DNA of 64,000 nucleotides, from the NCBI GenBank assembly GCA_002269645.1, contig NIVC01000195.1, forward strand, positions 248,001 through 312,000, read 5' to 3'. The notes under the pieces are model-generated. The model had not been told where the DNA came from. It did no database searches and saw only the letters and a list, made by a program, of their open reading frames with translations. Below, piece after piece: positions 19,493 to 60,837 of the stretch (the stretch's first letter is position 1; the number at the start of each line of letters is the position of its first letter). The translations under genes and the position numbers were made by a program. Source of the DNA: Macrostomum lignano (Eukaryota).

Positions 19493-22194
19493 CTTCCTCG
19501 TCGGGGCTCATGTGCCGCTACCAATCAGCCCGCTGCTGCCACCCGGAGCCGGCCGCCAGCTGGACTTGAAGCCCAAGCAAAACACGCAGCGCCAACGCCA
19601 GGGTGCTAAATTTGTAGCAGTAAAGTGCGATGCGCCCGTCGCCCCCAGCTGAGCTTGTTATTCTTTTCTATTGATATGTACACAATTGGCACACATGTAC
19701 ACTATAGATGTACATTCAGTGTGCGCAGAGCTACGTGCACTTCACTTTAGATTGTCTTTGCGCTCAAAGATGAATGCTAATTAATGTTTGAGCACATTAT
19801 TTTTGAAAGTATTCGAGTCCCCTCTTATTTGCCGTGCCCACCCCAAATGCCATTTAATCGAATTTCCTCTGCAAGCCTCGCGTCTGTACCGAAGTCGGCC
19901 ACAGGTCCTGTCGCTGTCGTGCATATTTTTATACAATGCTATTATTTGAGTTCCTTACCACCTTCCTTATTATTTGAGTTCCTTACCACCTGCTTAGCTG
20001 CTATTAACGCTATAAACGCAATGTGATGCGCTGCGGCCCGCACTGCACCTGATGCTATATGAATAAACTAATTTTTAAAACTAATTCAATTCATACATTG
20101 CCACGTACAAAACTATTTCATGTTCTCGAACACAAGACATCACAGGCACTCTGAAAGCCACACTCAGCTCTGCAGCCTCCAGTCATCATCAATTAATAGA
20201 CTGCATGGCTGGCTGCACCTGGCGGCGCTCAAGAGCCGAGCAGCAGCAACAGCAGCCGGAGGGCCCAGCCTCGAACCCCACGGAAGCCTGGGCAGGCGGG
20301 GCGGGCGGAAAGAGGCTGCTGAATTATTGAGGCAGGCAGCAGTCAGCCAAGCTCTTGGAAACAGATGCTCACCCCCCCCATCCGCCAGGCGTCTCTCGAG
20401 AGCGGCTCAGGGGGGGGGGCGCCGCCCCGCTGCGCCAATTCTTACTTTGTGAGGCGCAGGCCGGAGACCGCAGGCTGATAAGTGACTGCAGCCGGGACCG
20501 GGGGCGGCACGGGGCGGGGGGGCTGCCAGGCAGCTCGAATTCTTCGAATAAACTGCGCGCGTCCCCCCGCCGGCTCTCCCGCGGGATTTTTCTCCCATGC
20601 AACTCGAGCCGCTTCTTGCCGCTGCCCGGGCCTCCCCCCAGCTGGGCAATGAAATTGAAGCCGCCGCTGCTGCATTTTGCATGACAACCGACGGCTGACT
20701 CGAAAATCAACCGTCCTCGAACAACTCGCGTAGAGACGCGCAGGGGGGGGGCGCCTCAAGTGCAGACTTGAGCACTGCGGCTCTGCAACAGGCGGACAGG
20801 CCGGCTGGTTGGCCCAGCCATGCAAAACTCGCAGCTGGCCGGGAAAGTGGGAAGCAGAAGCGCATGGAGAGGATGATGAAGGAGCTGCCGGAGGAGGCTG
20901 GATCGGATGGGGATCGATTTTTTGGCACTGGCGCCGGACTCGCGGGGCTGGCGGGGAATATTGACACGCCGGCCGGAGTGAAGAGCCCCCTTCCCAGCAG
21001 AATAGCTGGGCTGGGGAGAATGCTCCCAGTGCTCCCAGCTGCCTACCGCGGCTTCATTAAAGCCGGCAGGCCCGCACCAGCCAAGCCGCTGGCCGATCGC
21101 ACGGGGCCGCATAGGTGAGACCGGGAGGCAGGCATGGCTGAACCAGACAGGGGAGCCGAGGGGCTGGAATCGGGAGGCCGGGGGAGCGGCTTTCTAATGA
21201 ACTGCCTAAGCCCGCCCGCGCCAGAGCGCCCGGTCCGTCCCAAATTGGGGAGCTGCAAGGCGCTGCGGGGACACAGGGGGGGGCAGTTGAAGAGATCTCC
21301 CATGCATTCTGAGCCCGGCCGAGCGAGGGGCAAATTAGGCGGCCGGGCCTGCGTGCGGAAGATGGACTGCGGGGCAGCGGGTGGATGCGGAGGATTAGCG
21401 AGCCAGCCAGGGGAAAATAGTAGGGATTGAGCAGCAGGGATTATGAGATAAGCGCGGATAAAATGGGTGCCAAACAGACCGGGGGAAGCCGGGAGGTCAG
21501 CAGCAGCCCCGCAGACTCCCAGCCGGGGGGGAAAGAAGGATCTCCCGGGCATCCGCAGCGCTGCAAAAGTGCACGCCCGGGCTGGGAGATGCAGATGCGT
21601 ATTTGAGAAGGCCGGGTGGGCCGGGCCGTGCAGCTGTCAGTCAGTGGAGCAGAGAAGAAGGGAAGGGCGCTGAGCGCCGGTCAAGGAGAATGAGTGCTCA
21701 AACCAGAGCAGTCCAGCGCCTGTTCCGCAACCAGCGATTTATCAACGGCTCTCATATGAGTTGATCAATAGTATGAGAGCGGGCCTGGGAACCCCCAATA
21801 CTCATTTTACCGCAGCCCGGAGCGCTAAAGGTCTCAGTGTGCTTCAAATTCCCTCTGCAAAAAAACAAAGTCAGAGAACGAGCTGTGTGAGCAGTGAATT
21901 AATTGACAATTAAAATGTATTGGCTGCAAAATAAATCCATAATGTACGAGCTCGTAAAATCTGCCTGAGAAAATCTAAAAACATTTAAAATATTTCTTCC
22001 ATATCTGACGTGACAAAAATTGCACAAGAAGCCTAACTGGAGAATCAGGACTAAATGATATAATTATTGATGGCATTGAAATATTGGGACGGCAGTGCCC
22101 CCCACCCCCTACAAAATTATTTGGCAGGCAATTGCCCACACTGTCCCCCACGGCTCCGCTGCGCCTGTGTAGCAGCGAGATCCTCCCCATAAAC

Positions 22195-23020
22195 TGCCGC
22201 CACCGGAATCTCCCCCTCCCTAGACTGGCAGCACCGGAATCTCCCCCTCCCTAGACTGGCGGCACCGGAATCTCCCCCATAGACTGGCACCGGCACCGGA
22301 ATCCCCCCAATAGACTGGCACCGGAATCTCCCCCCCCCCATAGACTGGCACCGGAATCCTCCCAATAGACTGGCACCGGAATCTCCCCCTCCCATAGACT
22401 GGCACCGGAATCCTCCCAATAGACTGGCACCGGAATCTCCCCCTCCCTAGACTGGCGGCACCGGAATCTCCCCTCCCTAGGACTAGCGGCACCGGAATCT
22501 CTCCCTAGACTGGCAGCACCGGAATCTCCCCCTCCCTAGACTGGCGGCACCGGAATCTCCCCCTCCCTAGACTGGCGGCACCGGAATCTCCCCCTCCCTA
22601 GACTGGCAGCACCGGAATCTCCCCCTCCCTAGACTGGCGGCACCGGAATCTCCCCCTCCCTAGACTGGCGGCACCGGAATCTCCACCTCCCTAGACTGGC
22701 GGCACCGGAATCCCCGCCTCCCTAGACTGGCGGCACCGGAATCTCCCCCATAGCCTGGCACCGGAATCTCCCTCCCATAGACTGGCACCGAAATCTGCCC
22801 CCATCTCATAGATTGGCGGCACCGGAATCTCCCCCATAGAGTGACTGCACCGGAATCTCCCCCATAGACTGGCACCGGCACCGGAATCCCCCCAATAGAC
22901 TGGCACCGGAATCTCCCCCCCCCATAGACTGGCACCGGAATCCTCCCAATAGACTGGCACCGGAATCTCCCACCCCATAGACTGGCACCGGAATCTCCCC
23001 CCCCGCCCATAGACTGGCAT
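22195..23020. repeat. ~25-30-bp minisatellite (GGCACCGGAATCTCCCCCTCCCTAGACT variants)
   Basis: About 30 variable units immediately downstream of the helicase stop codon. Confidence 0.9.
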
Positions 23021-23106: not shown

Positions 23107-26100
23107 TCAGCTGCCGCCTCCCTGCCTGGCGGCCAGCAGCCGAACAGCCTGCAGCAGGTTGGCCTCCCCGGCCAGCAGGTCCTGCAGCCGCTGTCTCTCC
23201 TCGGCGGAGCGGCAATACACAAGGCAGCGGCCGGCGTCCACCCGGACCCGGCCCCGAGACTGCACCAGCGCGGCTACCCGCGAAGGCGGATCGGCCAGCA
23301 CCAGCAGGTCGCAGCGGGGCAGGTCGAGGCCCTCGCAGGCGATGGGCGTGGCGACCAGCGCGTTGGCCTCGCCTCTGGCCACCGAGAACAGCAGGCGGCG
23401 CTGCTGCGCCACCGACATGCCGACGTCTCCAGCGGCGCCGTGCCCGATCAGGCAGGCCGGGCGGAGGTCGGCGAAGTCAGCAAAGGCCGAGTGAGAGGTC
23501 AGCAGATCGGTGAGGCGGCGCGCAGTGGCGCGTTCGCGCACGATCACCAGCGCCAGTCTGGCACCCCCGGTGCCGCGCAGGTCGTCGGCCAGGGCGCGCA
23601 GCACCGAGCCAGCGCCGGCAGTGGCGGCCTGGCCTTCGCGCAGGAGCTGCAGCGCATCGACAAGCGCCTCCGCGCTCTGGCGCATCTCGGCCAGCAGCTC
23701 CCGCGACAACAGCGACGACAGAGCGGCATCGTCCAGCTCGGCGACACGGGAGTCTTCGCAGACGGCCAGGCCCAAGGCGCTGCGCAGCTGCGAGGGTAGC
23801 GGCATTCACCCACTTATTCACTGAACCAATTCACCCACTTATCACCACCCGATTCACCCAATTATTCACTGCCCAATTTACACACTTATTCACTGCCCCA
23901 ATTCACCCACTTATTCACCGCCCCGATTCACCCACTTATTCACTGCCCGATTCACCCACTTATCTGCCCTAATTCACCCACTTATTCTGCCCTAATTCAC
24001 CCACTTATTCTGCCCTAATTCACCCATTTATTCACTGCCCCAATTTACCCACTTATTCACTGAACCAATTCACCCACTTATTTACTGCCCAATTCACCCA
24101 CTTATTCACTGCCCAATTCACCCACTTATTCACTGCCCCAATTCACCCACTTATTCACTGCCCAATTCACCCACTTATTCGCTCACCTCGCTCAGTCTCC
24201 GCAGCTGCTCAACCAGGAGGCGCACCGGTTGGCTGTCGGCAGTCCGTTCGGCCACCTCGTCCAGCACGCTGGCCAGATTCGGACAGTCGAGCCCTCCATT
24301 GCTCAGCAGCTGGTTCACCAGTAGGGCGGCGTCGGACGCCCCGGATGCTTCGGCAGCCTTCCGCAGGGCGGTGAGCACCACGGCGGAGTGGTTGATCAGG
24401 GCGGCCACCGCGGCCGTCTCCTCCGTCAGCGGCGGCACCAGTCGGCCAGAGATGCCCGCTCGGACAGAAAACTCGGCTAGCTGAGCCTGGGCGTCCGGCG
24501 AGCTCGGCCAGGCCAGTCTAGCGCCGCCCAGTCTGTCCAGGAGGCCGACCAGCATCTTCTGAGTGGCCGGCAGTGAGGCCTGCGAGGGCGGGCGAATTTT
24601 GATAATAAAAAATTTGGATGCCTGCAGGAAAATAGTGAGAACTTGCGGAATGCTACTATTAGTAATATAATCTTAGCTTTTGGGTTCGGGTATTTCTCAC
24701 AACTGCTTGGCTCAATAGGAGACAGGGTTTCGAGTAAAATTAGACATTGATTAACAGTCAATTGTCACTGACAGTCAATTGTCACTGACAGTCAATTGTC
24801 ACAGACAGTCAATTGTCACTGACAGTCAATTGTCACAGACAGTCAATTGTCACTGACAGTCAATTGTCACTGACAGTCAATTGTCACTGACAGTCAATTG
24901 TCACTGACAGTCAATTGTCAAAGACAGTCAATTGTCACTGACAGTCAATTGTCACTGACAGTCAATTGTCACAGACTGAACCAAGAACAATTCAAACCTG
25001 GCCGGCTGGCGAGGCGGTGAATCCCAGCAAGCGAGGCGACTCCAGCTCCGGCATGCTGAGCACTTGGCCGGCCAGCAGCGAGTACGGGTGCAGGGCGTCG
25101 CAGTGGTGCGCCTCGTCCATGGCCAGCAGGCAGGCCTGGTCCAGGCGCAGCGCCCCGGTGCGCAGGCAGTTGGCGTAGAAAGCGGCGGTGGTCACCACCA
25201 GGTCAGCTGCGGCCAGCGGCTGATCGTCAGGCAGGCTGTGCAGGTCGCCGCAGACCGCCGCCACGGCCAGCGACCGCGTCACCGTTGGGGTTGGCAGGGC
25301 TGGCGACGATGGCGGAGGCAGCGGCCGGACGAAACGGCGCATGCGAACCTGCGGGAGCAGTGGGACCCTCAGTCACTAGGCCCAGCCCTGTCACTCTGTC
25401 ACTAGGAAATAGCCCAGCCCTGTCACTCTGTCACTAGGAAATAGCCCAGCCCTGTCACTCTGTCACTAGGAAACCGCCCAGCCCTGTCACTCAGTCACTG
25501 GGAAACCGCCCAGCCCTGTCACTCAGTCACTGGGAAACCGCCCAGCCCTGTGACTCAGTCAGCAGACAACCGCCCAGCCCTGTCACTCAGTCAGCAGACA
25601 ACCGCCCAGCCCTGTCACTCAGTCAGCAGGAAACCGCCCAGCCCTGTGACTCAGTCAGCAGACAACTGCCCAGCCCTGTCACTCAGTCAGCAGGAAACCG
25701 CCCAGCCCTGTCACTCAGTCAGCAGACAACTGCCCAGCCCTGTCACTCAGTCAGCAGGAAACCGCCCAGCCCTGTCACTCAGTCAGCAGGAAACCGCCCA
25801 GTTCTCCCAGACCTGAGCCAGCTGAGCCCGCAGGAAGGCGGCCTGCTGCAGCACCAGCAGCACCTTGTCCACCAGGAACACGGCGCTACGGAGCGGATTC
25901 GCCTCCAGTGCTGCCAAAATGGCCAGGGCGGCCACCAGGGTCTTTCCCGTGCCGGTGGGCAGCACGCACAGCGCGTTGCCATGGCGACAGCAGAGACGGT
26001 ACGCCTCCAGCTGGTAAATGCGCGGCCTCAGCTGGGTCGGCCAGTCGGTCCGCGGATTGGCGACGAACTCGCACGGTGGCGCCTGTCGGTCCGGCGCCGG

Positions 26101-28981
26101 ACAGCGGACCGCCAGACGGCGCCGATGATCGCGGCCGGCCACGTGAGCCGCCACATTGTTTCCATGGAGACGGATGCCGCAAAGGTTGCACAACGAGTAG
26201 CCGTCAGGCAGCTGAACAACGGGCTGATAGCTGGCTGCGCGGTGGTACAGGGGTGTGGGCGCAACTGGTGAACAGGGTGGCCCGAGCCCTACTCAGTCCC
26301 TCCCGAGTCCCTCAGTCCCATCCGAGTCTCTACTCAGTCCCACCCGAGTCCCTCCTACACCGTGTACTCAGTCCCACCCGAGTCCCTCCTACACTGTGTA
26401 CTCAGTCCCATCCGAGTCCCTCAGTCCCATCCGAGTCTCTACTCAGTCCCACCCGAGTCCCTCCTACACTGTGTACTCAGTCCCACCCGAGTCCCTCCTA
26501 CACCGTGTACTCAGTCCCACCCGAGTCCCTCCTACACTGTGTACTCAGTCCCACCCGAGTCCCTCAGTACTCAGTAACTCTCTTGAATCCCACCTCAAGT
26601 CCATCTTAAGTTCCACTTAAGTCCCACCTGTCCCATCCGAGTCCCTCCTGAGCCTCACCTGAGAACCGTTTGAGTCCCTCTTGAGGATAATCATATTTTG
26701 CGCGTCACACGGGCTCACCAGCCTGCAAGTCCGGTTCCGGCCCAGCCCGATCGGTCGCTGCGGCTGGCTGAGCGATGCCCGAGACGCGCAGCCGCTTCAG
26801 ATGATTTTTGCCTTGCTTGTGGTTCAGCATCTGGTCTGGCGTGTTGCACTGCACATTGCACACAGTGCAGCGCAGCATGCCGTTAGCCTGGGACTCAACT
26901 AGCGGCTGGGCCTGGCCCGCCGCTTGATGGGGAACTGCGGAACCGGATAAGGCTGCGGAGGCTGCGGCGGGCAAGCCGGCGGAGGCTGTGGGGTTGAAGC
27001 CCGCGGAGGGCGAGGCTGCGGCGTTGAAGCCCGCGGAGGGCGAGGCTGCGGCGTTGAAGCCCGCGGAGGGAGAGGCTGCAGTGTTGAAGCCCGCAGTGTT
27101 GAAGCCTGCGGAGGGAGAGGCTGCAGCATTGAAGCCTGCAGTGTTGAAGCCAGCGGAGGGAGAGGCTGCAGCGTTGAAGCCTGCAGTGTTGAAGCCTGCA
27201 GTGTTGAAGCCCGCGGAGGGCGAGGTTGCAGCGTTGAAGCCTGCAGTGTTGAAGCCCGCGGAGGGCGAGGTTGCAGCGTTGAAGCCTGCAGCGTCGAAGC
27301 CTGCAGTGTTGAAGCCCGCGGAGGGGGAGGTTGCAGCGTTGAAGCCCGCGGAGGGAGAGGCTGCAGTGTTGAAGCCTGCAGTGTTGAAGCCCGCGGAGGG
27401 CAAGGTTGCAGCGTTGAAGCCTGCAGCGTCGAAGCCTGCAGTGTTGAAGCCCGCGGAGGGGGAGGTTGCAGCGTTGAAGCCCGCGGAGGGAGAGGCTGCA
27501 GTGTTGAAGCCTGCAGTGTTGAAGCCTGCGGAGGGCGAGACTGCGGAGGGAGAGGCTGCAGCGTTGAAGCCTGCAGCGTTGAAGCCTGCGGAAAGAGAGG
27601 CTGCGGCGTGAGAACGAGCGACAGTTGATGAAACGCCGACAGAGCTGGTGGCTGATGAAGATAAGCGGCTGACATCGATGCCCCAGGTAGCCAGGTTGAT
27701 TGGCGAGGCGCATTTGCCGTTCAAGTCGAAATTCAGTCCCAGCGTTGATGCACTCGTAATTGCGCTTTGTCTCTGTGAGCCTCCGCCTGCGGCAGCCGGC
27801 GCAACCGAGTCTGCAGGCCGCTGCTGGGGTGGAACTGATTGCGGCGACACTGCAGATAAAGATGAAGAAGCTGCAGATGAAGACGGGGAGGCTGCAGATG
27901 AAGACATATGTGAGGCTGTAGCTGCCGCTCTCCTGGCCTTATTCTTATGTAGCCGGCCATTCCAGTGGTCGGCCAGGTTGCTCATGCTGGTGGCGAAGGT
28001 GCCGCAGAGATTGCAGCGGTAGCGGCCCTCCGATTCAAAGTGAAACCAGGGACTGGCAAGGATCTCGCTGTGCAGCTGCGGCTGTTGGACAGGTGGCACA
28101 GGCTGGCTGGCGGGTTGCACAGTCTGGCTAGCAGATTGCACGGGCTGGCTGGCAGATTGCACGGGCTGGCTGGCAGGTTGCACGGGCTGGCTGGCAGGTT
28201 GCACGGTCTGGTTGGCAGGTTGCACGGTCTGGCTGGCAGGTTGCACGGTCTGGCTGGCGGGTTGCACAGTCTGGTTGGCAGGTTGCACGGTCTGGCTGGC
28301 ATACTGTAGTGAGGGCAGCGGCGACTGGCTGACTTGAGCGCCGGAGTGAACCGACATCAGAGAGAATTCGTCAGTTAGCGAGGCCACAGCGATCCGCGCC
28401 GAGTGGTTGGGAATCGAATTGGGAGCAGCGGCGGCGGCAGCTTCGAGGTTGGGAACCAGCGGCTGGGTGGAAGACGCGGCTTGCTGCTGCTGGTTGCCAG
28501 GCAGCACAATCGACGAACTGGTTTCGGAGGCGTCAAAAGCCAGTGAGGGAGCGCCGACGCCAGCCCTGACGACGGCATTCTTGTGCCCCCGGCCCTGGAA
28601 ATGCGAGGCCAAGTCGCTTTTGGACGTGGCGTGGATGTTGCAGAGGTCGCACCAGTACCAGACAACGCCGCCGCCGCGGTCCTCCTGCCGGACATGCTCG
28701 GCGGAATTTCTCACGTATTCGAGAGCCTCCGGCATCTTCAGCCGCCGCTGGTGCGCCTGGCCGCGGCAATGGGCCGCCAGGCTGGCCTCAGAGTTGCAGG
28801 CCACGTCGCAGATGAGGCAGCAGAAGGCCTCGCCAGCGGGCTCGGCATGCAGCGCCCGGCTGACGGCCCGCTGGTGCGGCCGGCCGCTCAGGTGGTCGGA
28901 GCGGTGAACTGCGGACGTGAAGGTCACGCCGCACAGGTCGCAGCGGTTACTGTTGACCTGATTCTGCAATCGGTACAGCAT
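23107..28981 (-). CDS. Six U1/matrin(JAZ)-type C2H2 zinc fingers fused to a Dicer/RIG-I-like DExD/H helicase, 1369 aa
   Basis: Exons (minus) 28981-26719, 26234-25813, 25348-24998, 24579-24187, 23787-23107; phases 1,0,0,0; 4110 nt. Fingers of the form C-x2-C-x11/12-H-x2-G-x2-H (x6). Helicase motifs YQLE, LPTGTGKT, MDEAHH, LLGFTASP, LIGHG, LVATPIACEGLDLPRC and LVQSRGRVR; TGA after a short helix. Confidence 0.8.
23805..24180. repeat. ~23-bp intronic minisatellite (AATTCACCCACTTATTCACTGCCC)
   Basis: Fills almost all of helicase intron 4. Confidence 0.9.
24757..24975. repeat. 17-bp intronic minisatellite (GACAGTCAATTGTCACT), ~13 copies
   Basis: In helicase intron 3; the unit contains CAATTG and TGAC-A-GTCA palindromes. 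Confidence 0.9.
25372..25800. repeat. 32-bp intronic minisatellite (CCCAGCCCTGTCACTCAGTCAGCAGGAAACCG)
   Basis: Fills helicase intron 2, with gradual variant drift along the array. Confidence 0.9.
26285..26570. repeat. Variable intronic minisatellite (CTCAGTCCCACCCGAGTCCCTCCTACAC...)
   Basis: In helicase intron 1. Confidence 0.8.
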
Positions 28982-29215
28982 GCGGGCTTTATAAAACTAG
29001 CTTGCCTGGTAGCACCTCAAGGACCATTTGGAGTAGAAGACCGAGTGCGATTAGGAGTAGCAAGGGCTGAACTTCATTTCCAAGAAAATTATTGGGGACA
29101 GGCTTTTCTGAGCCCCAAAAATATGTTTTCTAAAAGCTAGAATATACAATTTTCAAAGCCAGTTTCCAAACGTTTAAAAAACAAATCATATGGCTCTGCA
29201 TTTACTCGTAAGAGC

Positions 29216-29580
29216 CATTGATCTTCTATTCCTAGTGGTCCTTGATCTTCTATTCCTAGTGGTCCTTGATATTCTATTCCTAGTGGTCCTTGATATTTTA
29301 TTCCTAGTGGTCCTTGATATTTTATTCCTAGTGGTCCTTGATCTTCTATTCCTAGTGGTCCTTGATCTTCTATTCCTAGTGGTCCTTGATCTTCTATTCC
29401 TAGTGGTCCTTGATCTTCTATTCCTAGTGGTCCTTGATCTTCTATTCCTAGTGGTCCTTGATATTCTATTCCTAGTGGTCCTTGATATTCTATTCCTAGT
29501 GGTCCTTGATCTTCTATTCCTAGTGGTCCTTGATCTTCTATTCCTAGTGGTCCTTGATCTTCTACTCCTAGTGGTCCTTG
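29216..29580. repeat. 24-bp minisatellite (TTGATCTTCTATTCCTAGTGGTCC), ~15 copies
   Basis: Explains the spurious LDLLFLVV ORF 29190-29615. Confidence 0.9.
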
Positions 29581-30192
29581 AGACGGGGCCAGACAGTGGC
29601 AGGCTGATTAGATAGTAAATATTTTCCAGTCCATTAACTTGCTAGATCGCCCTCCACGGATTACAGTCCTTGCTGAATCAGCCCTGCCAATGTACGCTGC
29701 CGGGGCGCATGGGGTGGCTGTGCGGACCGGCCAGCTCCCCAGATGCAAAGTACAGTGTGTGCGTACAGAGTGGCTAATCTGGCCTGCCCAATTGGAATAA
29801 ATCAAGTAGCAGCAGAAAGGCAAATATTTTCTGACTGAATTGGCCGGCAAAAATAGGAGAAGCGAATCGCGCGGCCTGATTACGGACACAATGTACTTTA
29901 TAAAGTTACGGCAGAACAGAGTACAAAAATAGTTCAGCTGTAAGCGAAATGATAGAATATTTTAGACTACCCATTATTATCACAAAGCAAACAAATTACA
30001 TTATATGGAACTATTAATTTTGGCAACACACTAAGAATGTCAATCATTAATAAATTAAACTAAATGTCAATAAGAGACAAGCATATAAAATTAGGAATAC
30101 TTAACAGAGCAAACTAGAGCACCATGCGACAATGGGTTGCTTTTTAAAAGAGCAAAGTTACACAATGTGCTGACTGTTCAACTCCGGCCAGC

Positions 30193-30797
30193 CTAACTGG
30201 CAGCCACATAGAAGTAGTTGTAGTTCAGCCTGTAGATGAGGTTCATCAGGTTGAGACGCTGATTCGAGCAGTGCTCAGCGATGGCCTCAATCAGCTGTTT
30301 GAGCAGGCCGCTGAAGTTAGCCGAGAAAGTCTCCACGGTGGCGGCGAGGTCGGCGGACTCAGCGGAGCCACCGTGCCTGGCGATGCAGTTGCAGAAGGTG
30401 ACGCAGACGGCCAGCAGTTTGTACAGCAGCTTGAGCAGGTCCGGCTGCTGCAGCATGCAGTCCGACAGGCAGGAGGTCAGCATGTGCGAGTGCCGCTCGA
30501 TCAGCTCGTCCAGGTTTCCCACCCTGCAAGCGTTGATAAATTTAAATGCTTCAATCAGAGCCTGACCGTCTGCTTTCCTAGAAATCTTGGCTGTTTGGGC
30601 ACCAGTTTGAATTTCTGGGCACAGGACAAGACAAAGATGGGAATGAAGGCCAATCCAAGCAAGACACATGAGCCAGGGGAACTGAAAGCGCATGCCTAAG
30701 ATGGATGCTCATCCGCTGAATAATCAATAATCAAGAGTCACGAGTCTGCTGGAACCTAAAGATCGCTAGCTGTGTAGGTCTGGCAATACAGAAAAAA

Positions 30798-30832
<35 letters not shown>

Positions 30833-30845
30833 GGCAGACAGACAT

Positions 30846-30896
<51 letters not shown>

Positions 30897-31207
30897 TACA
30901 GACAGACAGACAGACAGGCAGACAGACAGGCAGGCAGACATACAGACAGACAGACAGGCAGACAGACAGACAGGCAGGCAGACATACAGACAGACAGACA
31001 GGCAGACATACAGACAGGCAGACAGACAGACAGGCAGACAGACAGGCAGACAGACAGACAGACAGGCAGACAGGCAGACAGGCAGACAGGCAGACAGACA
31101 GGCAGACAGACAGATAGGCAGACAGGCAGACAGGCAGACAGACAGGCAGACAGGCAGACAGACAGGCAGACAGACAGGCAGACAGACATACAGACAGACA
31201 GACATCC

Positions 31208-31244
<37 letters not shown>

Positions 31245-34200
31245 GGCAGACAGGCAGACAGACAGGCAGACAGGCAGACAGACAGACAGACAGACAGACA
31301 GACTTCCAGACAGACAGGCAGACAGACAGACAGACAGACATACAGACAGACAGACATCCAGACAGACAGGCAGACAGACAGAAAGGCAGACAGAATAGGG
31401 AAATTGGCCTGGTAGGAACTCATCGGACTGTGAAGGCCAACCCACTAAGCCCAGCCTGTACATGCCTAGCCAGGGCCTCTGCACACCCCGTATGCGGTAT
31501 GCGTGTGCCTGCTGTGGCAGGGAAAATGGCCTAAACGCTAACGGCAGCCCCGCAAAGCAGAGAAGCAGACTCACTTATCCAGCTGCGTCCACAGCCGGTG
31601 CCAGGCGGGCTCAATGACCTCAAATGTCATGTAGTACTCCAGGTGCTGCACAAAGGTGAGCATCTGCTGGCGAAGCGCGTAGGCGGAGGTGACGCTGGCC
31701 CGGTTGCGGTGCTGCTGCAGCCACACGGAGCCCAGCAGGCGCTCCACGTGCCGGCAGTAGAAGAGGTGGCGGAACAGCATCTGGTAGCGCGTGATGGCCC
31801 GCCTGTTAATGAGGAGGCTGAGCGGGAAGTCGACCTCAATGTCCAAGCTGAAGGCTTCAAGGGCGGTGAGCCGAGCAGCGGCGGTGGCATCGGGGGCGGC
31901 CTCTCGCAGGCTGACCAGCGCCAGCATCTGGCCGATGAGGTCGTGGGGCAGCAGCGCCACCCGCAGGCGGTCCCGGTTGGGATCGGGACCGGCAGCGCTG
32001 GTCCGCACCGCTGTCTCCAGCAGCGACTCCAGCCGGTTGAGGGAGACCCGGCCGGCCTCGCGGCGCATCTCGGAGTCAGCGAGGTCCATGAAGTGCACAA
32101 GGAAGTCGCTCTGGTCCAGCAGGAAGAACCGCTTCAACGAGCACAGAAGGTCGCGCAGGCCCTTCTCACGCAGCAGCCGCATGAGCAGGGCGGCGGCCTT
32201 GGCGTGGGCGCTCTCCAGCTGCTCAACGTAGCGCCCGCCCTCGTAGGCGTAGACCAGCTCCTCGGCCGGATAGTCCAGCAGCGCCTCGCCGCACTGCGCC
32301 ACCACGTTGAGGTATTTTCCCGTGCTCAGCACCTTCTCCGCCATCGGCCACAGGAAGCTGGGCACCCGCTGGCTGCACAGCTGGTAGCGATTCTCCCAGT
32401 AGTCGCTGTGGAATGTGTTCGGGGGGTGTCTGCTTGCCAGCCTGGGTTCAGGACGCGAACTACTGGTAGCGAAATACTACTCGGTTTTAGCGTAAATGAT
32501 TGGCCCTCGCTACTTGTGTAGGCAGTATGTTATGCATTCTACTGTCATTTCTACTGCTTGGACGCTGTCTCTGCCTTAGTGTCTGCCTGTCTGTCTTAGT
32601 GCTTACAGGTCTGTCTGTCTGTCTGTCTGTCCGAGATGGACAGTCACAATAAGATAGACAGTGCTTAGTCTGCATGCCTGCCTGTCTCAAGGCTCGTTCA
32701 CACAGCCATAGAACAGCGCGATTCGCTTGATCACACAGGTTTCGTACTGTACAAATCTGTACATCAAATACTGGCTTCGTGCATAAGCTGTGTGATTCGA
32801 TGACCGCGTGAGCGAGTCTTCAGCAGCCACCAGCTACCAGCAGCCCGGCTGAAGATGCTGACACATGATACCTAATGCTTCAGCAAGTCAAAACAATCCA
32901 GTCGAGCACGCACTTGATGTACTCTCTGGTGAGCACCTCCTTAGACGTGGCGGTGTTCTCGGTGACCATGAACTCGGAGTAGGGGTCGAGCACGCGGCCC
33001 CGGTAGACCCAGGTCTGCAGCATGTCGAAGAAGGGCCGACTGGCCGCCTTTGTCAGGTGCAGCAGCAGGCGGTGCCGCTTCGGGTCGCCAGCCGAGGCGC
33101 AGGCTTTGTCGTGCAGCAGCGAGAGCACGGAACCGCCCAGGCACTCTCCCTGGTTGACGTCGTGTGCGATCTCGGCCAGAGTCTCCAGTACGCGGGCCGG
33201 CTCCTGCAGGCAGCAGTGCAGCCGGTGCAGCCGCAGCTGCCCGATCCGCTGCTGGTGCTCCAGCTGGCAGACAAGGACGCCGAGATCCCTGCAGGGAGGT
33301 GGCATGGACAGGTTAGTGGAGCCCTTTGTTTAGCAATCTGAGGCTGTGAATGCTCTCAAGATTGGAGCCCTAAGAATCTCCTCTTTTTACATTGCAATTC
33401 CCAAATCTCCCCTGAGATGGAGCCCCCAAATCTCCGCTGAGATGGAATCCCCAAATCTCCCTATGAGATATAATCCCCAAATCTCCCCCGAGATAGAATC
33501 CCCAAATCTGGCCTGAAATAGAACCCCAAAATTTCCCCTGAGATAGAATTTCCTAATCTCCCCGAGATAGAATCCAAATCTCCCCAGAGATGAAATCCAA
33601 AATCTCCCCTCGTCCCCTGAGATAGAATCCCTAAATCTCACCAAAGATGGAATACCAAAATCTCCCATGAGATTGAATTCCCAAACCTGCCCTCTTCCCT
33701 TGAGATAGAATCTCCAAATCTCCCCGAAGATAGAATCCCAAAATCCTCCCTAAGAAAGAATCCCTAGTCTTCCATGAGATTTAATTCCCAAATCTCCTCT
33801 CGTCCCCTGAGATAGAATCCCTAAATCTCCCAGGAGATGGAATCTCCAAATCTCCCCTGAGATAGAATCTCCAAATCTCCCCTGAGATGGAATCCACAAA
33901 TCTCCTATTAGATGGAAATCCCAAAATGTGCCACTCGATAGACATCACAAATTTTCCATTTCCAGCCCAAATTGGCACACGGACCCGCACCAGCCTCACC
34001 TGAGCAGGGCAGTGATGGAGCCGCTGAGGGCCTGGTTCACCATGCCGTACTCATAGGCAGCTTTGTCCTCGGCGAAGCGGGTCACATCGGAGCGGTGGCT
34101 GCAGACGGGCAGCAGCTGGCCGAGCATCTCCAGCCGGGTGGCGTCCAGGCTGTTGTCGACATCGAAGCCGCGCCTGTCGGCCCGAGAGGCGAGCGGACGA

Positions 34201-36168: not shown

Positions 36169-38189
36169 TTGTTGGCTGAAATACAGACCAAAGTCCTTAG
36201 ACTTGACCATTGTGAGCTCATTGCAAGCAAAAATTATATACTGGCTTTAACTTGTGATATGAAGTATGAAAATATGAAATATTTAACTTAGCTAGTCTGT
36301 TGTCATTTATTTGGAATTTTAAAGAGACAGTGCATGCAAAAATCTGACTTGAGGAAATTCAATGGCTATACAGTTGATTTTACATATTTAATTACAGACT
36401 ACATATTCAGAAATGTAACTTTGCTAAAATTTTTATTATAATTTATTAATTATTATAATTTTCATTATAAATGGCCCTAAATTTTGAAATTATAACAGCA
36501 ATTGTCTGTACAGAATGTCATATTTCCAATAATTTATCCATGTTTACTAATTTTCTTCTTTCAGTTTCAGTTTTTTTGACAGCTTTGTGGTAAACAAGTA
36601 CAAAAGTCAGTGTCCAACATTCTTTATTGTCTTATGGACAATACTATGACACAAAAATTCAGTCTGCGTGGAGCATCAAAGCACAGCTTTGAGTCTACAG
36701 GACTGTTACCATTCATCAAAAGTAAGCAATACTGATTGTAGGCAATTTTTTGGCAATTGGTTGTAGGCTTGTCTTTTTCTATTGTTTTCATAGCCTTTCA
36801 AGATTAATCTATTTTGCAGATTTTCTCTGAATTTTCACAGATGTTGGGTGGAGCTGCCACAAAGATGCTAAAAATGAAGCCATCGAGTTGGCCATTTCTG
36901 CTCACCTCCACCAGGTGGTGACTTGAAAATGCTGCCAGAAGAAAATGATCTTGGTGGCCCAGCATTGTGCCTTTTGTGGAGAAGTTGACAGCGACGATAA
37001 CAAAGAGGTAGATGAGGAAGATGAGCCTAACAAAGAATAGATCGACAACAAGGAAAAAGAGGCCAATGATGAGGAGAGAGGGCTGCTTTGCTTGATAGGA
37101 ACAGTTCTTTCTAGATGATCTGGCAGCTGATGAAGATATGGCCATCATTACTGATGGTACTATTTCTCTATATTCTCTTTGATTTAAAGTTTCTACAAGC
37201 CAATCTTCTAAAACAGTACTGCTTTTATTCATAATGAACTTTTCTTTTACATTTATTTCACAAATACATCTTTGCATTAAAGCATCCTATTTGTCATTTG
37301 TATATCTTCTATATATGTTTTTTGCATAGTCAAATATAATTATTATTGGAATATTCACATTGATGTGGTTTTTATAAAAATTTTACTTTTTTATTACCAG
37401 GTTGCACCAAATGGCTATAGCAGTGAACATTACTAAATAAGTAGAGTATATATACCCCATGCTACAAAGGTTGCACAAATGTTGCTATCTAGTTGATTTT
37501 GCAATGTTGCATATTAACATTCCTGCAATATTCCTAAGCATAACAAATGAAACATTTCATCAACATCTACTTGTTGTCATCAACATTCCTGCAACAGTGC
37601 TGCAACAAACTTGGCACTAGGGGATATAGGCCTACCTCATTATAATATATACATCCCTATTGCAATGCATAGGCATTTTGGCAAATAGTGTCTAGCACAA
37701 GATGGCAAAGCAGCAAGAGGTGGTAAAAGGTACAGCATGACATGGCAAAGTGGCAAGAGGTGCAATGTGGCGAGACAAAGTGGCAGGAGGTAGCAAAAGG
37801 TGCAACATGGTGTGGCGGTAACAGTCCACTTCGGTAATAGCCATTTCAGTAATAGCCACTTTGGTAACAAGTGAGAATAATATATAATATATATTAACAA
37901 GCTGTTGAAACCCATGGATTTTGAAACTGGGGAATTCCAATTCCCGGAAATATTTGTGCATATGCTCTGAGATCTAAGGCCATACTCAAACAAAAACTTG
38001 TTAATAGTTAATAGGATAGAGTAAACATAAAATGGAGTACATTTGTGTAAAATTAGGATTTGAGGCAAACATTTGATATTGTTGGCTGGGGTACGTGCTA
38101 CGCAGAATGTCGGACAATGTCTATCTGACTCTAAAACATGTATTGGCAAACTCTGGCCTCTGCCTCTGGCTCTGACTCTCCCTACGTAC

Positions 38190-38491
38190 CTTGGATCGAT
38201 TGCAACTTGTATCTCCTCTTCTGTTTCCTCTCTTCTCTCTCATCCCTCATTTCTCCTTTCTTCTCTTTCTCCTCTCTCCCCCTTATCTCTCGTCTCTTCC
38301 TTCTCTTCTCTACTCTTTCCTCTCTCTCTCTTTCCTCTCATCTCTTTTCTTGTTTTATCTCTCCTCTCTCCCCTCGACTCTCGTCTCTTCCCTCACCTCT
38401 CTTCTCTCTCATCTGCTTTCTCATCTCCCTTTTCTCCCTTTTCTCTTCTTTTATCTTTTATCTTTTATCTCTTCTTGTTTCTCTCTGCTCT

Positions 38492-38544
<53 letters not shown>

Positions 38545-39345
38545 TCTCTCCTCTCCCATCTCTCTTCTCCTCTCTAGTCTCTCCCTCTTCATTCTCCTTT
38601 TTCTTCTTCTCTCTTCTCACTCACTTCTCTCTCCCTGTCTCTCCTCTCTCCTCTAGTCTCTGTAATCTCTTCTCTCTTATCTCTCCTCTGTTCTCTCTAC
38701 TTTCCTATCTCTCGTCTGTTCACCCTCATCTCTGCTCTCTCCTTGCTTTCCTTTCTCGTTTCTCCTCTCCTCTTCTCTTCTCTTTCCTCTTCTATACTCT
38801 CTCTCCTCTCTCCTCTATTATCTTCTCTCGTCTCTCTGCACCCTCCTCTCACCTTTTTAATCTCTCATTTTTACTCTCTTATCTCTCCTTTCATCTGTCT
38901 TATCTCTACAATCTTATCTCTTTCCTCTCTCCTCCTCTTCCCTTTACTCTCTCATCTCTCCTTTCTCCCCTCTTCTTTCACCACTCTCTTATCTCTATCT
39001 CTTCTCTTCTCACTCCTCTCTCCCCCTCTTATCTCCTCTCTTCTTTATCCTTTCTACTCTCTCCTCTCCTCTTGACCCTCTGTCATCTTCTTTCTGCTCT
39101 CTCGTCTCTACTCTCTTTTCAATCTTCTCTACTCTCCTCTCTCATCAATCCTCTGTCTCATCTCTCCCCTCTTCTCACATTTACTCTTTCCTCTCCCTCC
39201 TTTCTCCCCTCCTCTTGCTTCTTCCTCCCTTCTTCTCTGCTCTCTCCTCACCACTTGTCTCTCCTCTTATCTTCTGTTTTCTCTTACCCCTTTCTCGCCT
39301 CTCCTCTCTTCTAATAGTCTATTCCTTTTCCTTTCTACTCTCATC
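38190..39345. repeat. ~1.15-kb CT-rich polypyrimidine/polypurine low-complexity tract
   Basis: Almost entirely C/T on the + strand, including a (CT)n core near 38490-38540. Confidence 0.9.
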
Positions 39346-44670: not shown

Positions 44671-44779
44671 AGTTAAAAGAAGCTGCAACGTTTGTACAAT
44701 TTTTTTTCAGGCAAAAAATGCCTCCCCTCCTCTTCAGGGGACCCCTCACTAAAATAGCTTTGCGAAAAAATCAGCATTG

Positions 44780-60822: not shown

Positions 60823-60837
60823 GTGAGTTTGGGGTTG

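What the first reader, a model, noticed from the sequence alone, without database searches (positions are those of the whole stretch)
23107..28981. dsRNA-zinc-finger array fused to a bare RIG-I/Dicer-type helicase: candidate new dsRNA sensor
Seen: five exons join in frame into 1369 aa, with six C-x2-C-x11/12-H-x2-G-x2-H fingers followed by a helicase with intact motifs (LPTGTGKT, DEAH, TASP, GHG, EGLDLP.C, QSRGRVR) and a stop about 40 aa later. Known: this finger type binds dsRNA in JAZ/ZNF346, ZMAT3 and ZFR; TASP and QSRGRxR are typical of Dicer/RLR helicases, which normally carry RNase III/PAZ (Dicer) or CARDs plus a C-terminal Zn domain (RLRs). Inference: N-terminal dsRNA-binding fingers replace the RLR C-terminal RNA-binding domain in a standalone dsRNA-dependent ATPase for antiviral or RNAi use. 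I do not recognise this architecture.
Basis: partly seen in the sequence, partly recalled or inferred. Interest (0 to 1): 0.78.

Follow-up and report, generated by a model that had tools for sequence, protein, structure and literature searches.

The report
Zinc-finger array fused to Dicer/RIG-I-type helicase
This is a real flatworm (Macrostomum lignano) gene that joins six double-stranded-RNA-type zinc fingers to a Dicer/RIG-I-like helicase with no nuclease or signalling domain. It belongs to an animal-wide family, from sponges and corals to molluscs and acorn worms, for which I found no study.

Summary
On the minus strand, five GT-AG exons (28981..23107) give 1369 aa. They encode six C-x2-C-x11/12-H-x5-H fingers (Pfam zf-met 8e-23, zf-C2H2_jaz 4e-11) and a complete SF2 helicase that stops 44 aa after motif VI.

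The window is Macrostomum lignano. A 97%-identical copy in GenBank (PAA57349.1, a transcript-derived model) uses the same junctions and the same stop.

The helicase has the Hel1–Hel2i–Hel2–pincer layout of Dicer/RLR helicases (AlphaFold pLDDT 84.5). The top 50 Foldseek hits are all RIG-I, MDA5, LGP2, ancestral Dicer helicase or DRH-1. It is not FANCM-like, and it has no RNase III, PAZ, CARD or RLR C-terminal domain.

The architecture is not unique. The same finger-plus-helicase layout occurs in bivalves, gastropods, cephalopods, Lingula, hemichordates, crinoids, sponges and corals. Corals add a Z-alpha domain. All are "uncharacterised" or auto-named Dicer-like or RIG-I-like, and I found no paper on them.

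The most likely function is a dsRNA-tethered ATPase/translocase that works through partners in RNAi or antiviral dsRNA handling. This is inferred, not shown.

Verdict: a new variant of a known kind, of moderate-to-high interest.

The parts
23107..28981 (-). Whole coding region of the ZF-helicase gene (5 exons, 1369 aa from the genomic ATG; TGA at 23109-23107)
   Evidence: ORFs and splice sites read from the sequence. The junctions are identical to the transcript-derived M. lignano model PAA57349.1.
26719..28981 (-). Exon 1: five JAZ/matrin-type fingers plus two low-complexity repeat regions. An in-frame TAG lies 6 codons upstream of the ATG.
   Evidence: Pfam zf-met 8.4e-23 and zf-C2H2_jaz 3.7e-11.
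28964..28969 (-). TTGCAG, a probable spliced-leader trans-splice acceptor. The mature mRNA would start at 28963 (AAT = Asn7), with the SL's terminal AUG in frame.
   Evidence: The 5'-partial CDS of PAA57349.1 starts exactly here. The M. lignano SL ends ...TTGCATG and the acceptor motif is [T/C]TNCAG (PMC8629364).
28874..28942 (-). ZF1 (aa 14-36) CDLCGVTFTSAVHRSDHLSGRPH
28751..28819 (-). ZF2 (aa 55-77) CLICDVACNSEASLAAHCRGQAH
   Evidence: Best zf-C2H2_jaz stretch is 55-78. Weak match to Xenopus dsRBP-ZFa 1zu1.
28583..28651 (-). ZF3 (aa 111-133) CDLCNIHATSKSDLASHFQGRGH
   Evidence: Best zf-met stretch is 109-133; zf-U1 2e-5.
28090..28301 (-). Coding 21-nt tandem repeat (about 10 copies) giving (QTVQPAS)n between ZF3 and ZF4
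   Evidence: Copy number differs in the paralogous copy.
27947..28015 (-). ZF4 (aa 323-345) CNLCGTFATSMSNLADHWNGRLH
26982..27613 (-). Coding 15/30/45-nt tandem repeats giving about 40 AGFN(A/T)A(A/T)SPS-type units between ZF4 and ZF5
   Evidence: Copy number differs in PAA57349.1.
26801..26869 (-). ZF5 (aa 705-727) CTVCNVQCNTPDQMLNHKQGKNH
   Evidence: zf-met 7e-6 and zf-C2H2_jaz 1.6e-5.
25813..26234 (-). Exon 2: the proximal finger ZF6 plus helicase Q-motif, motif I and motif Ia in one exon
   Evidence: The acceptor at 26234 is the one used by PAA57349.1.
26125..26190 (-). ZF6 (aa 770-791) CNLCGIRLHGNNVAAHVAGRDH, the family-conserved finger next to the helicase
   Evidence: Aligned with the proximal finger of snail, mussel, Lingula, octopus and coral homologues.
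25939..25962 (-). Motif I (Walker A) LPTGTGKT
   Evidence: Invariant in the family.
24998..25348 (-). Exon 3: rest of Hel1, including DEAH (25106-25117) and TASP (25007-25018)
   Evidence: DEAHHC and LGLTASPAG are family signatures.
24187..24579 (-). Exon 4: end of Hel1 and first part of the helical insertion (Hel2i)
   Evidence: AF2 model.
23575..24426 (-). Hel2i-like all-helical insertion (aa ~1064-1214; spans intron 4)
   Evidence: AF2 helices 308-458 of the modelled segment. Full-length alignment to AncD1D2 and MDA5. Foldseek.
23107..23787 (-). Exon 5: end of Hel2i, then Hel2 with motif IV (LALVIV), GHG, motif V (ATPIACEGLD) and motif VI QSRGRVR (23242-23262), a C-terminal pincer-like helix (23119-23205), and the stop
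   Evidence: The C-terminal end is conserved in all full-length homologues.
26235..26718 (-). Intron 1, almost wholly a 34/109-nt tandem array
   Evidence: The same unit occurs in the paralogous copy.
25349..25812 (-). Intron 2, a 32-nt tandem array (13 copies)
24580..24997 (-). Intron 3, containing a 17-nt tandem array (13 copies here, 28 in the other copy)
23788..24186 (-). Intron 4, a 25/49-nt tandem array

Best explanation
This is an intact, expressed Macrostomum lignano gene. It encodes a member of a conserved but uncharacterised metazoan family. The family has an N-terminal array of JAZ/ZFa-type (U1-like C2H2) fingers separated by long disordered linkers. One conserved finger sits just before a Dicer/RLR-type helicase (Hel1–Hel2i–Hel2–pincer helix), and nothing follows the helicase.

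Shown here: the gene model, the domain identities, the fold class, the absence of nuclease, CARD or RLR C-terminal domains, and the phyletic spread.

Inferred mechanism:
- The fingers bind A-form dsRNA without regard to sequence, and their number gives avidity for long duplexes.
- The helicase clamps the duplex and hydrolyses ATP to translocate along it or remodel it. All ATPase motifs are intact.
- Because it has no effector domain, its output must go through partners. The most likely route is handing long dsRNA to, or regulating, the Dicer/Argonaute machinery, as DRH-1 does for C. elegans Dicer. Published surveys report that flatworm Dicers lack or have reduced helicase domains.

Separate confidences: about 0.95 for identity and architecture, about 0.6 for a dsRNA-dependent ATPase, and about 0.3 for the Dicer-partner role.
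For: Gene model. It is confirmed by the transcript-derived PAA57349.1, which is 97% identical with the same junctions and stop and the same GCP-gene synteny (annotation method in PMC5730564).

Fingers: Pfam zf-met 8e-23, zf-C2H2_jaz 4e-11 and zf-U1 2e-5. The best solved relative is Xenopus dsRBP-ZFa, though weakly at E 0.003.

Helicase:
- phmmer against PDB gives AncD1D2 2.9e-25, aligned through the insertion domain, then Hef, DCL1, RIG-I and LGP2.
- The family profile against PDB gives AncD1D2 245 bits, MDA5 200, RIG-I 185-189, LGP2 184, DCL1 182, Hef 176, human Dicer 164 and FANCM 100.
- The AF2 model has pLDDT 84.5 and pTM 0.76, with a helical insertion and a terminal helix.
- The top 50 Foldseek hits are all RLR, ancestral Dicer helicase or DRH-1, with E down to 4e-24.

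Family: the same architecture occurs in Mercenaria, Aplysia, Lottia, Haliotis, Dreissena, Octopus, Lingula, Ptychodera, Glandiceps, crinoids, Oscarella, Sycon and corals. Corals add Z-alpha, a domain of ADAR1/ZBP1-type nucleic-acid sensors.

Nearest non-family relatives are RNAi-linked helicases. Of 18 scanned, four carry dsRBD, five are fused to RdRP and two are Dicers.

Context from the literature: flatworm Dcr-1 models mostly lack the helicase and Dcr-2 is reduced (PMC5594548). Lophotrochozoan DICER2 lacks the helicase, yet flatworms make endo-siRNAs (PMC11114477). DRH-1 supplies helicase activity to C. elegans Dicer in trans (PMC11095941, abstract).
Against: - No biochemical, expression or genetic data for any family member were found, so RNA binding, ATPase activity and pathway are all inferred.
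- The phyletic pattern does not fit a simple role as a replacement for a lost Dicer helicase. Molluscs have the family yet keep the helicase in DICER1 and have no DICER2. Acropora, the one coral sampled there, has DICER2, and corals also carry the family.
- JAZ-type fingers are typical of nuclear or nucleolar proteins, so a nuclear RNA-processing role is equally compatible.
- Motif II is DEAH and motif III is TASPAG, as in Hef/FANCM, not the DECH of Dicer/RLR.
- Some coral paralogues have degenerate motifs V and VI, so ATPase activity is not universal in the family.
- The AncD1D2 top score may only reflect the consensus-like nature of a reconstructed ancestor.
Confidence: 0.6

Rival explanations
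1. It is an RLR-like signalling receptor. dsRNA binding by the fingers and helicase would trigger an innate immune cascade through an unrecognised interaction surface, for example the low-complexity regions. In corals the Z-alpha domain would contribute.
For: The fold class is the same as RIG-I, MDA5 and LGP2. Coral members carry Z-alpha. NCBI auto-names some members 'RIG-I-like' or 'DHX58-like'.
Against: There is no CARD, death-fold or RLR C-terminal domain. The closest non-family helicases are RNAi-type, not RLRs. M. lignano and Lingula have separate canonical RLRs. LGP2 shows that a CARD-less member can only modulate signalling.
Confidence: 0.15
2. It is a nuclear regulator or suppressor of RNAi, or a structured-RNA remodeller. 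It would be analogous to Dictyostelium HelF or to nuclear JAZ/ZFR-type finger proteins, and not an antiviral sensor.
For: The next-best helicases include amoebozoan helicase-plus-dsRBD proteins of HelF-like architecture. helF deletion makes Dictyostelium hypersensitive to RNAi (PMC2175303). From general knowledge, JAZ/ZNF346 fingers occur in nuclear or nucleolar proteins.
Against: Orthology to HelF was not tested. No NLS or localisation data exist. Z-alpha in corals points towards immune-type nucleic-acid sensing.
Confidence: 0.2
3. It is a DNA-repair or fork-remodelling translocase of the Hef/FANCM/Mph1 kind that has acquired nucleic-acid-binding fingers.
For: Motif II is DEAH and motif III is TASP(A)G, as in Hef/FANCM. 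The Hef helicase scores 176 bits, comparable to the plant Dicers DCL1/DCL4 and above human Dicer.
Against: FANCM scores only 100 bits against 185-245 for RLR and the Dicer ancestor. There is no ERCC4 or HhH domain. Motif VI QxRGRxR and the fold hits are of Dicer/RLR type. The fingers are an RNA-duplex-binding type. The partner domains seen across relatives (Z-alpha, dsRBD, RdRP, RNase III) are all RNA-related.
Confidence: 0.04
4. The fusion is an artefact of the gene model. The finger exon and the helicase exons would be two adjacent genes, as annotated in Bulinus truncatus, possibly two cistrons of one trans-spliced operon.
For: In Bulinus the finger-array ORF and the finger-plus-helicase gene are annotated separately, 116 bp apart. 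M. lignano commonly resolves polycistronic precursors by SL trans-splicing.
Against: - Exon 2 has no Met before the helicase and is in phase with exon 1's GT donor.
- The TBONE/TransDecoder-derived M. lignano model has a single ORF across the junction.
- RefSeq models in Mercenaria, Aplysia, Argopecten, Haliotis, Dreissena and Lottia are single 1.4-2.1 kaa proteins.
- Even without exon 1, ZF6 is fused to the helicase within one exon.
Confidence: 0.03

Closest known systems
Dicer N-terminal helicase domain (animal Dicer-1/Dicer-2 ancestor AncD1D2, PDB 9mw6; plant DCL1, PDB 7eld)
   Same: The Hel1–Hel2i–Hel2–pincer layout is shared. AncD1D2 is the best sequence match, both to the single protein (2.9e-25) and to the family profile (245 bits), and it aligns through the insertion domain. 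Motif VI is Q-S/M-RGR-A/V-R. The nearest non-family relatives include Dicers.
   Different: There is no DUF283, PAZ, RNase IIIa/b or C-terminal dsRBD. Motif II is DEAH, not DECH. The helicase sits at the C-terminus behind a zinc-finger array instead of at the N-terminus of a nuclease.
RIG-I-like receptors (RIG-I, MDA5, LGP2) and nematode DRH-1/DRH-3
   Same: The fold class is the same; the top 50 Foldseek hits are these proteins or the ancestral Dicer helicase. Profile scores are 184-200 bits over the full helicase including the pincer. Like LGP2, it has no CARD.
   Different: There is no Zn-binding C-terminal regulatory domain (PF11648), no CARDs and no DRH N-terminal domain. The protein stops 44 aa after motif VI. 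Any auxiliary RNA recognition is N-terminal, through C2H2 fingers.
JAZ/ZNF346, Xenopus dsRBP-ZFa, ZFR, ZMAT3 (dsRNA-binding U1-like C2H2 finger proteins)
   Same: The finger spacing is C-x2-C-x12-H-x5-H, with a conserved H-x2-G-x2-H and long inter-finger linkers. Pfam zf-C2H2_jaz and zf-met match. ZFa is the best solved match, though weakly.
   Different: Those proteins have no enzymatic domain. Here the array is fused to an ATPase. dsRNA binding by these particular fingers is untested.
Dictyostelid HelF-like helicases (Dicer-type helicase plus dsRBD) and amoebozoan/fungal helicase-RdRP fusions
   Same: Each is a stand-alone Dicer-type helicase joined to a dsRNA-binding module, with no nuclease. 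They are the next-best hits after the family. HelF modulates RNAi.
   Different: Their RNA-binding module is a dsRBD, or an RdRP is attached, rather than JAZ fingers. They come from a different eukaryotic supergroup. Orthology was not tested.
Archaeal Hef / FANCM / Mph1
   Same: They share DEAH and TASPG motifs and a helical insertion domain between the RecA lobes. Hef scores 176 bits.
   Different: FANCM scores only 100 bits. There are no ERCC4 or HhH domains. Those enzymes act on branched DNA.

Membership tests
Dicer/RLR-type ('duplex-RNA-activated ATPase', RIG-I-like family) SF2 helicases | SF2 motifs Q, I, Ia, II (DExH), III, IV, V and VI all present | tested here: met
   RIYQ, LPTGTGKT, FLVDKVLLVLQQ, DEAH, TASP, LALVIV, ATPIACEGLD and QSRGRVR were read from the sequence. 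Pfam ResIII, DEAD and Helicase_C match.
Dicer/RLR-type ('duplex-RNA-activated ATPase', RIG-I-like family) SF2 helicases | All-helical insertion domain (Hel2i) between Hel1 and the core of Hel2 | tested here: met
   The AF2 model has helices at 308-458 of the modelled segment, with pLDDT mostly 80-90. The alignment to AncD1D2 and MDA5 runs through this region. Foldseek alignments span 570-600 columns.
Dicer/RLR-type ('duplex-RNA-activated ATPase', RIG-I-like family) SF2 helicases | Pincer/bridging helix after Hel2 | tested here: met
   A single long helix at 582-610 ends the protein. The profile aligns to MDA5 up to position 797 of 802. Only the first pincer helix is present.
Dicer/RLR-type ('duplex-RNA-activated ATPase', RIG-I-like family) SF2 helicases | ATPase stimulated by dsRNA | not testable with these tools
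   This needs recombinant protein.
RIG-I-like receptors (RIG-I/MDA5/LGP2) | C-terminal Zn-binding RNA-recognition domain (RIG-I_C-RD, PF11648) | tested here: not met
   There is no Pfam hit. The stop comes 44 aa after motif VI, and this end is conserved in all homologues.
RIG-I-like receptors (RIG-I/MDA5/LGP2) | N-terminal tandem CARDs (RIG-I, MDA5) | tested here: not met
   The N-terminus consists of zinc fingers and low-complexity sequence.
Dicer | Two RNase III domains, PAZ/platform, and DUF283 (Dicer_dimer) | tested here: not met
   None is found in the protein. None is found in the long ORFs of the roughly 8 kb downstream. The transcript-derived paralogue ends at the same stop.
Hef/FANCM/Mph1 | Helicase closest to FANCM/Mph1; ERCC4 nuclease(-like) and HhH2 C-terminal domains in Hef and FANCM | tested here: not met
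   FANCM scores 100 bits against 184-245 for RLR and the Dicer ancestor. There are no ERCC4 or HhH hits. The Hef helicase alone scores 176 bits, so a formal tree is still needed.
JAZ/ZFa-type dsRNA-binding zinc-finger proteins | U1-like C2H2 fingers (C-x2-C-x12-H-x5-H) matching PF12171/PF12874, separated by long linkers | tested here: met
   There are six fingers. zf-met scores 8.4e-23, zf-C2H2_jaz 3.7e-11, and ZF5 7e-6. Linkers range from 18 to about 360 aa.
JAZ/ZFa-type dsRNA-binding zinc-finger proteins | Binding to A-form dsRNA | not testable with these tools
   The only solved-structure match is weak: ZFa 1zu1, E 0.003.
Unnamed metazoan 'ZF + Dicer/RLR-type helicase' family (e.g. Lottia V4BFR5, Aplysia LOC101845957, Lingula LOC106154762, Mercenaria LOC123536219) | A proximal JAZ-type finger, a conserved (A/V)P..R..P linker and a C-terminal helicase with LPTGTGKT, FLVDKVLLVLQQ, DEAHHC, LGLTASPAG and QxRGRxR, ending about 45 aa after motif VI; usually further N-terminal fingers | tested here: met
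   Alignments A1, A2 and A4. Family-profile hits reach E down to 1e-264. The architectures were confirmed by Pfam.

The most novel reading that the evidence does not exclude
The finger-helicase proteins form a fourth, ancient branch of animal duplex-RNA-activated ATPases, alongside Dicer, the RLRs and the DRHs. The branch would date to before the sponge-eumetazoan split and was not seen in vertebrates or ecdysozoans among the named hits.

In this branch, JAZ-type fingers (plus Z-alpha in corals) take the RNA-recognition role of the RLR C-terminal domain. The protein would act in trans as the missing processive helicase for helicase-less Dicers. That would explain how flatworms mount efficient RNAi and make endo-siRNAs.
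Probability: 0.25. Interest if true: 0.85.

Novelty: new variant of a known kind. Interest (0 to 1): 0.6.

Why it matters
Dicer/RLR-type helicases are the core of dsRNA sensing and RNAi in animals, and their evolution is usually told with three actors: Dicer, the RLRs and the nematode DRHs.

This gene is a clean, complete example of a widespread extra lineage. Domain-based surveys miss it because it has neither RNase III nor the RLR C-terminal domain. The Aplysia immunome study does not mention the Aplysia member by its gene or protein accession, and automatic pipelines mis-name members as "Dicer-like", "RIG-I-like" or "DHX58-like".

It gives a concrete, testable candidate for an open question. 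Flatworms use RNAi very efficiently and make endo-siRNAs, yet their Dicers are reported to lack the helicase. What supplies that activity?

M. lignano allows RNAi knock-down and transgenesis, so the hypothesis can be tested directly. The coral versions with Z-alpha link the family to Z-nucleic-acid sensing.

Tried and rejected
- **run_python** failed, so all coordinates were worked out by hand and no phylogenetic tree could be built.
- **First homologue search.** The search with the window protein returned only 3 hits. Its Ala/Leu/Arg-rich composition probably saturated the word filter. Re-searching with a profile of the snail and bivalve hits, plus the exhaustive HMMER search, recovered the family.
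- **Splice acceptors.** My first choice for exon 2 was 26264. I replaced it with 26234 after comparison with PAA57349.1. An alternative exon-4 acceptor at 24621 was rejected for the same reason.
- **"Helicase-only" homologues.** For the clearest case, P0001, this looks like a truncated ORF call rather than a finger-less protein. Its first residues align to an internal segment of Mercenaria P0066, just after the proximal finger. P0005-P0007 and P0014 may be the same; this was not checked.
- **TATAAA 8 nt upstream of the ATG.** I considered this as a promoter element. The SL trans-splice acceptor explains the transcript 5' end better.
- **Literature.** Eight literature searches, six of them aimed at the family, found no description of it. 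The library is open-access only, so this is not proof of absence.
- **FANCM/Hef reading** rejected on scores and on domain content.
- **Downstream ORFs** carry no RNase III, PAZ or RLR C-terminal domain.


Full report
**1. The observation**

The feature lies on the minus strand. Reading the ORFs and the minus-strand sequence gives five exons with canonical GT-AG borders:
- E1 28981..26719 (donor G|GTGAGC, phase 1)
- E2 26234..25813
- E3 25348..24998
- E4 24579..24187
- E5 23787..23107 (TGA)

A second in-frame acceptor at 26264 would add 10 aa.

Exon 1 encodes five fingers (aa 14-36, 55-77, 111-133, 323-345, 705-727). Exon 2 begins with a sixth (aa 770-791). All have the form C-x2-C-x12(11)-H-x2-G-x2-H.

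The helicase motifs are LPTGTGKT, FLVDKVLLVLQQ, DEAH, TASP, GHG, ATPIACEGLDLPRC and QSRGRVR. All are intact, and the stop is 44 aa after motif VI.

Pfam supports both halves:
- zf-met 8.4e-23 (four stretches), zf-C2H2_jaz 3.7e-11, zf-U1 2e-5
- ResIII 6e-11, DEAD 1.4e-10, Helicase_C 6.8e-9
- No RNase III, PAZ, CARD or RIG-I_C-RD

**2. Organism and independent support for the gene model**

The exhaustive HMMER search returned P0065. This is GenBank PAA57349.1, [quoted passage not shown].

P0065 is 97% identical to the window protein from ZF5 to the stop. It uses the same four junctions, including acceptor 26234, and the same stop. It differs in the copy number of the two coding repeats.

Its contig (Mlig_3_7, NIVC01002499.1) has the same neighbour: a gamma-tubulin-complex (GCP) gene immediately upstream on the same strand. 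In the window, the last GCP exon ends at 30193. The same four intronic tandem-repeat families are present, with different copy numbers.

The window is therefore M. lignano. It is either an allelic or paralogous copy, since that genome has large blocks of at least 95% identity (PMC5730564), or the same locus in a different assembly.

The Mlig_3_7 annotation is built from RNA-seq (StringTie/TACO/TBONE, with ORFs by TransDecoder). The single ORF spanning the finger exon and the helicase exons is thus transcript-derived evidence against separate mRNAs.

Two further points hold independently of that model:
- ZF6 and helicase motifs I/Ia lie in one exon.
- Exon 2 contains no Met, so it needs an upstream coding exon.

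**3. The 5' end**

The genomic ATG at 28981 is preceded by an in-frame TAG six codons upstream.

The 5'-partial CDS of PAA57349.1 starts precisely at Asn7. This is the base after TTGCAG| (window 28969-28964).

That hexamer fits the M. lignano trans-splice acceptor motif [T/C]TNCAG. The 35-nt spliced leader ends ...TTGCATG (PMC8629364).

The SL's AUG would be in frame with AAT CAG GTC. The mature protein is therefore probably M-NQVNSNRC... (1364 aa). This is an inference, and ZF1 is retained in either case.

**4. The 3' end**

Every full-length homologue ends about 40-50 aa after motif VI, at the same alignment position. The long ORFs in the roughly 8 kb downstream have no Pfam hit. No RNase III, PAZ or RLR C-terminal exon is missing.

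**5. What kind of helicase it is**

The single sequence against PDB gave:
- reconstructed animal Dicer helicase ancestor AncD1D2, 2.9e-25, aligned through the insertion domain
- Hef 2e-21
- DCL1 1e-20
- RIG-I 7e-18
- LGP2 1.5e-17
- MDA5 about 4e-15
- DRH-1 9e-12
- FANCM 2e-11

A 17-sequence family profile against PDB gave:

| Target | Bits |
|---|---|
| AncD1D2 | 245 |
| MDA5 | 200 |
| RIG-I | 185-189 |
| LGP2 | 184 |
| DCL1 | 182 |
| Hef | 176 |
| Human Dicer | 164 |
| DRH-1 | 148 |
| Dcr-2 | 140 |
| FANCM | 100 |

The AlphaFold2 model of ZF6 plus helicase has pLDDT 84.5 and pTM 0.76. It shows Hel1, an all-helical insertion (residues 308-458 of the segment, equivalent to Hel2i), Hel2, and one long terminal helix (582-610, pincer-like).

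The top 50 Foldseek hits are all RIG-I, MDA5, LGP2, ancestral Dicer helicase or DRH-1. E-values run from 4e-24 to 6e-20 over 570-600 columns. TM is about 0.5, as expected when an apo model is compared with RNA-closed structures.

So it is a bona fide Dicer/RLR-type ("DRA") helicase. It is not FANCM-like, but it is not clearly inside either Dicer or the RLRs. Two points complicate placement:
- Motif II is DEAH(HC) and motif III is LGLTASPAG, resembling Hef/FANCM. Motif VI, Q-x-RGR-x-R, is Dicer/RLR-like.
- AncD1D2's top rank may partly reflect the consensus-like nature of a reconstructed ancestor.

I scanned 18 of the best non-family hits from the exhaustive search:
- four are helicase plus dsRBD (HelF-like architecture)
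- five are helicase-RdRP fusions
- two are Dicers
- seven show only helicase-type domains (one is a low-complexity sequence)
- none is a canonical RLR

This leans towards the RNAi side of the family. No tree could be built, because the script machine was lost.

**6. The architecture is conserved, not unique**

The profile searches, name look-ups and Pfam scans show the same layout of JAZ/zf-met fingers followed by this helicase at the C-terminus in:
- **Bivalves:** Mercenaria XP_053384999 (1669 aa, at least 7 fingers), Mactra, Dreissena, Potamilus, Argopecten, Mytilus
- **Gastropods:** Aplysia XP_005108875, Plakobranchus, Haliotis, Lottia V4BFR5, Babylonia, Nucella, Bulinus
- **Cephalopods:** Octopus, Argonauta
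- **Brachiopod:** Lingula
- **Hemichordates:** Ptychodera, Glandiceps
- **Crinoids:** Anneissia, Antedon
- **Sponges:** Oscarella, Sycon
- **Scleractinian corals:** Montipora, Oculina. These have a Z-alpha domain (PF02295, 1e-9 to 6e-12) ahead of two fingers and the helicase.

In Bulinus the annotation splits the locus into a 1425-aa finger-array gene and a finger-plus-helicase gene 116 bp apart. This is probably an annotation split.

All members are "hypothetical" or "uncharacterized", or are auto-named "dicer-like protein 1", "dicer 2-1", "DCL2-like", "RIG-I-like" or "DHX58-like". No vertebrate, arthropod or nematode appeared among the roughly 45 named family hits. This is suggestive of loss but is not proof.

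Six of the eight literature searches targeted the family and found no description of it. The Aplysia immunome survey does not mention its Aplysia member by gene or protein accession.

**7. Mechanism**

*Shown:* a multi-finger array of the dsRNA-binding finger class is linked by long disordered, repeat-rich spacers to an apparently catalytically competent DRA helicase. There is no effector domain.

*Inferred:* the fingers give sequence-independent, avidity-based tethering to long A-form duplexes, as established for JAZ and ZFa. The helicase clamps the duplex and uses ATP to translocate or remodel it. Output requires partners.

The best-supported partner hypothesis is the small-RNA machinery:
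- Flatworm Dcr-1 models mostly lack the N-terminal helicase, and Dcr-2 is strongly reduced (PMC5594548).
- Lophotrochozoan DICER2 lacks the helicase and PAZ domains, yet planarians and schistosomes make 21-nt endo-siRNAs (PMC11114477).
- In C. elegans a separate RLR-type helicase, DRH-1, supplies this activity to Dicer in trans (PMC11095941, abstract).

Against a simple complementation story, molluscs have the family yet keep the helicase in DICER1 and lack DICER2. Acropora, the one coral sampled there, has DICER2, and corals also carry the family.

The rivals are:
- an LGP2-like immune modulator or sensor, for which Z-alpha in corals speaks
- a nuclear HelF-like suppressor of RNAi (helF knockout is hypersensitive to RNAi)
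- a DNA-repair translocase (unlikely)
- a mis-joined gene model (very unlikely)

**8. Verdict**

The architecture is widespread in public data, but no paper describing it turned up in the open-access library.

I rate it a new variant of a known kind: an undescribed, ancient subfamily of Dicer/RLR-type helicases defined by N-terminal JAZ fingers. Interest is 0.6.

Noticed in passing
window 23788-24186, 24580-24997, 25349-25812, 26235-26718; also 22193-23001 and 29218-29581: Each of the four introns is almost entirely one tandem-repeat array with its own unit (25/49, 17, 32 and 34/109 nt). Further arrays sit just after the stop (31 nt) and upstream of the start (24 nt). The other M. lignano copy (L003) has the same units in the same introns but different copy numbers; the 17-mer, for example, has 13 versus 28 copies.
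   Followed up: partly
window 28090-28301 and 26982-27613: Two in-frame coding tandem repeats in exon 1 give (QTVQPAS)n and about 40 AGFN(A/T)A(A/T)SPS units. The latter are GF-rich and faintly reminiscent of FG-type low-complexity regions. Copy number differs between the two genomic copies, so these spacers evolve fast.
   Followed up: partly
window 28963-28993: A TTGCAG trans-splice-type acceptor lies 15 nt inside the ORF, and a TATAAA lies 8 nt upstream of the genomic ATG. The SL's terminal AUG would be in frame. The gene lies 1.2 kb downstream of a same-strand GCP gene, so co-transcription as an operon is conceivable.
   Followed up: partly
window 30193-~35100 (-): Gamma-tubulin complex component gene. 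GCP_C_terminal scores 4e-48 at 31574-32365, and the last exon is 30196-30693. Its introns also contain tandem arrays, for example at 30731-31574.
   Followed up: partly
window 42170-44749 (-): Degenerate non-LTR retrotransposon. It has an endonuclease/exonuclease/phosphatase fragment (44027-44749) and an RVT_1 fragment (42588-43298), spread over different frames and interrupted by stops.
   Followed up: partly
window 61323-63092 (+): LTR-retrotransposon gag-protease ORF, with a zf-CCHC knuckle and a gag-type aspartyl protease.
   Followed up: partly
window 57380-60882 (+): A series of GC-rich ORFs with C-x2-C...H-x3-5-H patterns, separated by tandem-repeat blocks. This looks like another multi-exon zinc-finger gene. 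The one exon tested gave no Pfam hit.
   Followed up: no
window 5865-7253 (+): A 462-aa ORF with a weak, sub-threshold VWA_4 match at its N-terminus (E 1e-4, 22 bits against a cutoff of 27) and an Arg/Ala-rich tail. Its identity is unclear.
   Followed up: partly
L002 4892-10804 (Bulinus truncatus JAGDYQ010000012.1): The snail orthologue is annotated as two genes: an eight-finger 1425-aa protein and Btru_006351, which is one finger plus the helicase. They lie 116 bp apart on the same strand. This is probably one gene that was split by the annotation.
   Followed up: partly
Coral homologues P0016 and P0018 (alignment A4): Some coral paralogues have degenerate motif V (TTASKESLD, TSAPEDSLG), degenerate motif VI (QMRARG, QIRARS) and no GHG motif. 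These may be pseudo-ATPase copies sitting alongside intact ones.
   Followed up: no
window 38073-39314: A strongly strand-skewed (GC skew -0.68), CT-rich low-complexity block inside an AT-rich region (36-42 kb). It translates as Ser/Leu/Phe-rich ORFs and is probably non-coding simple sequence.
   Followed up: no
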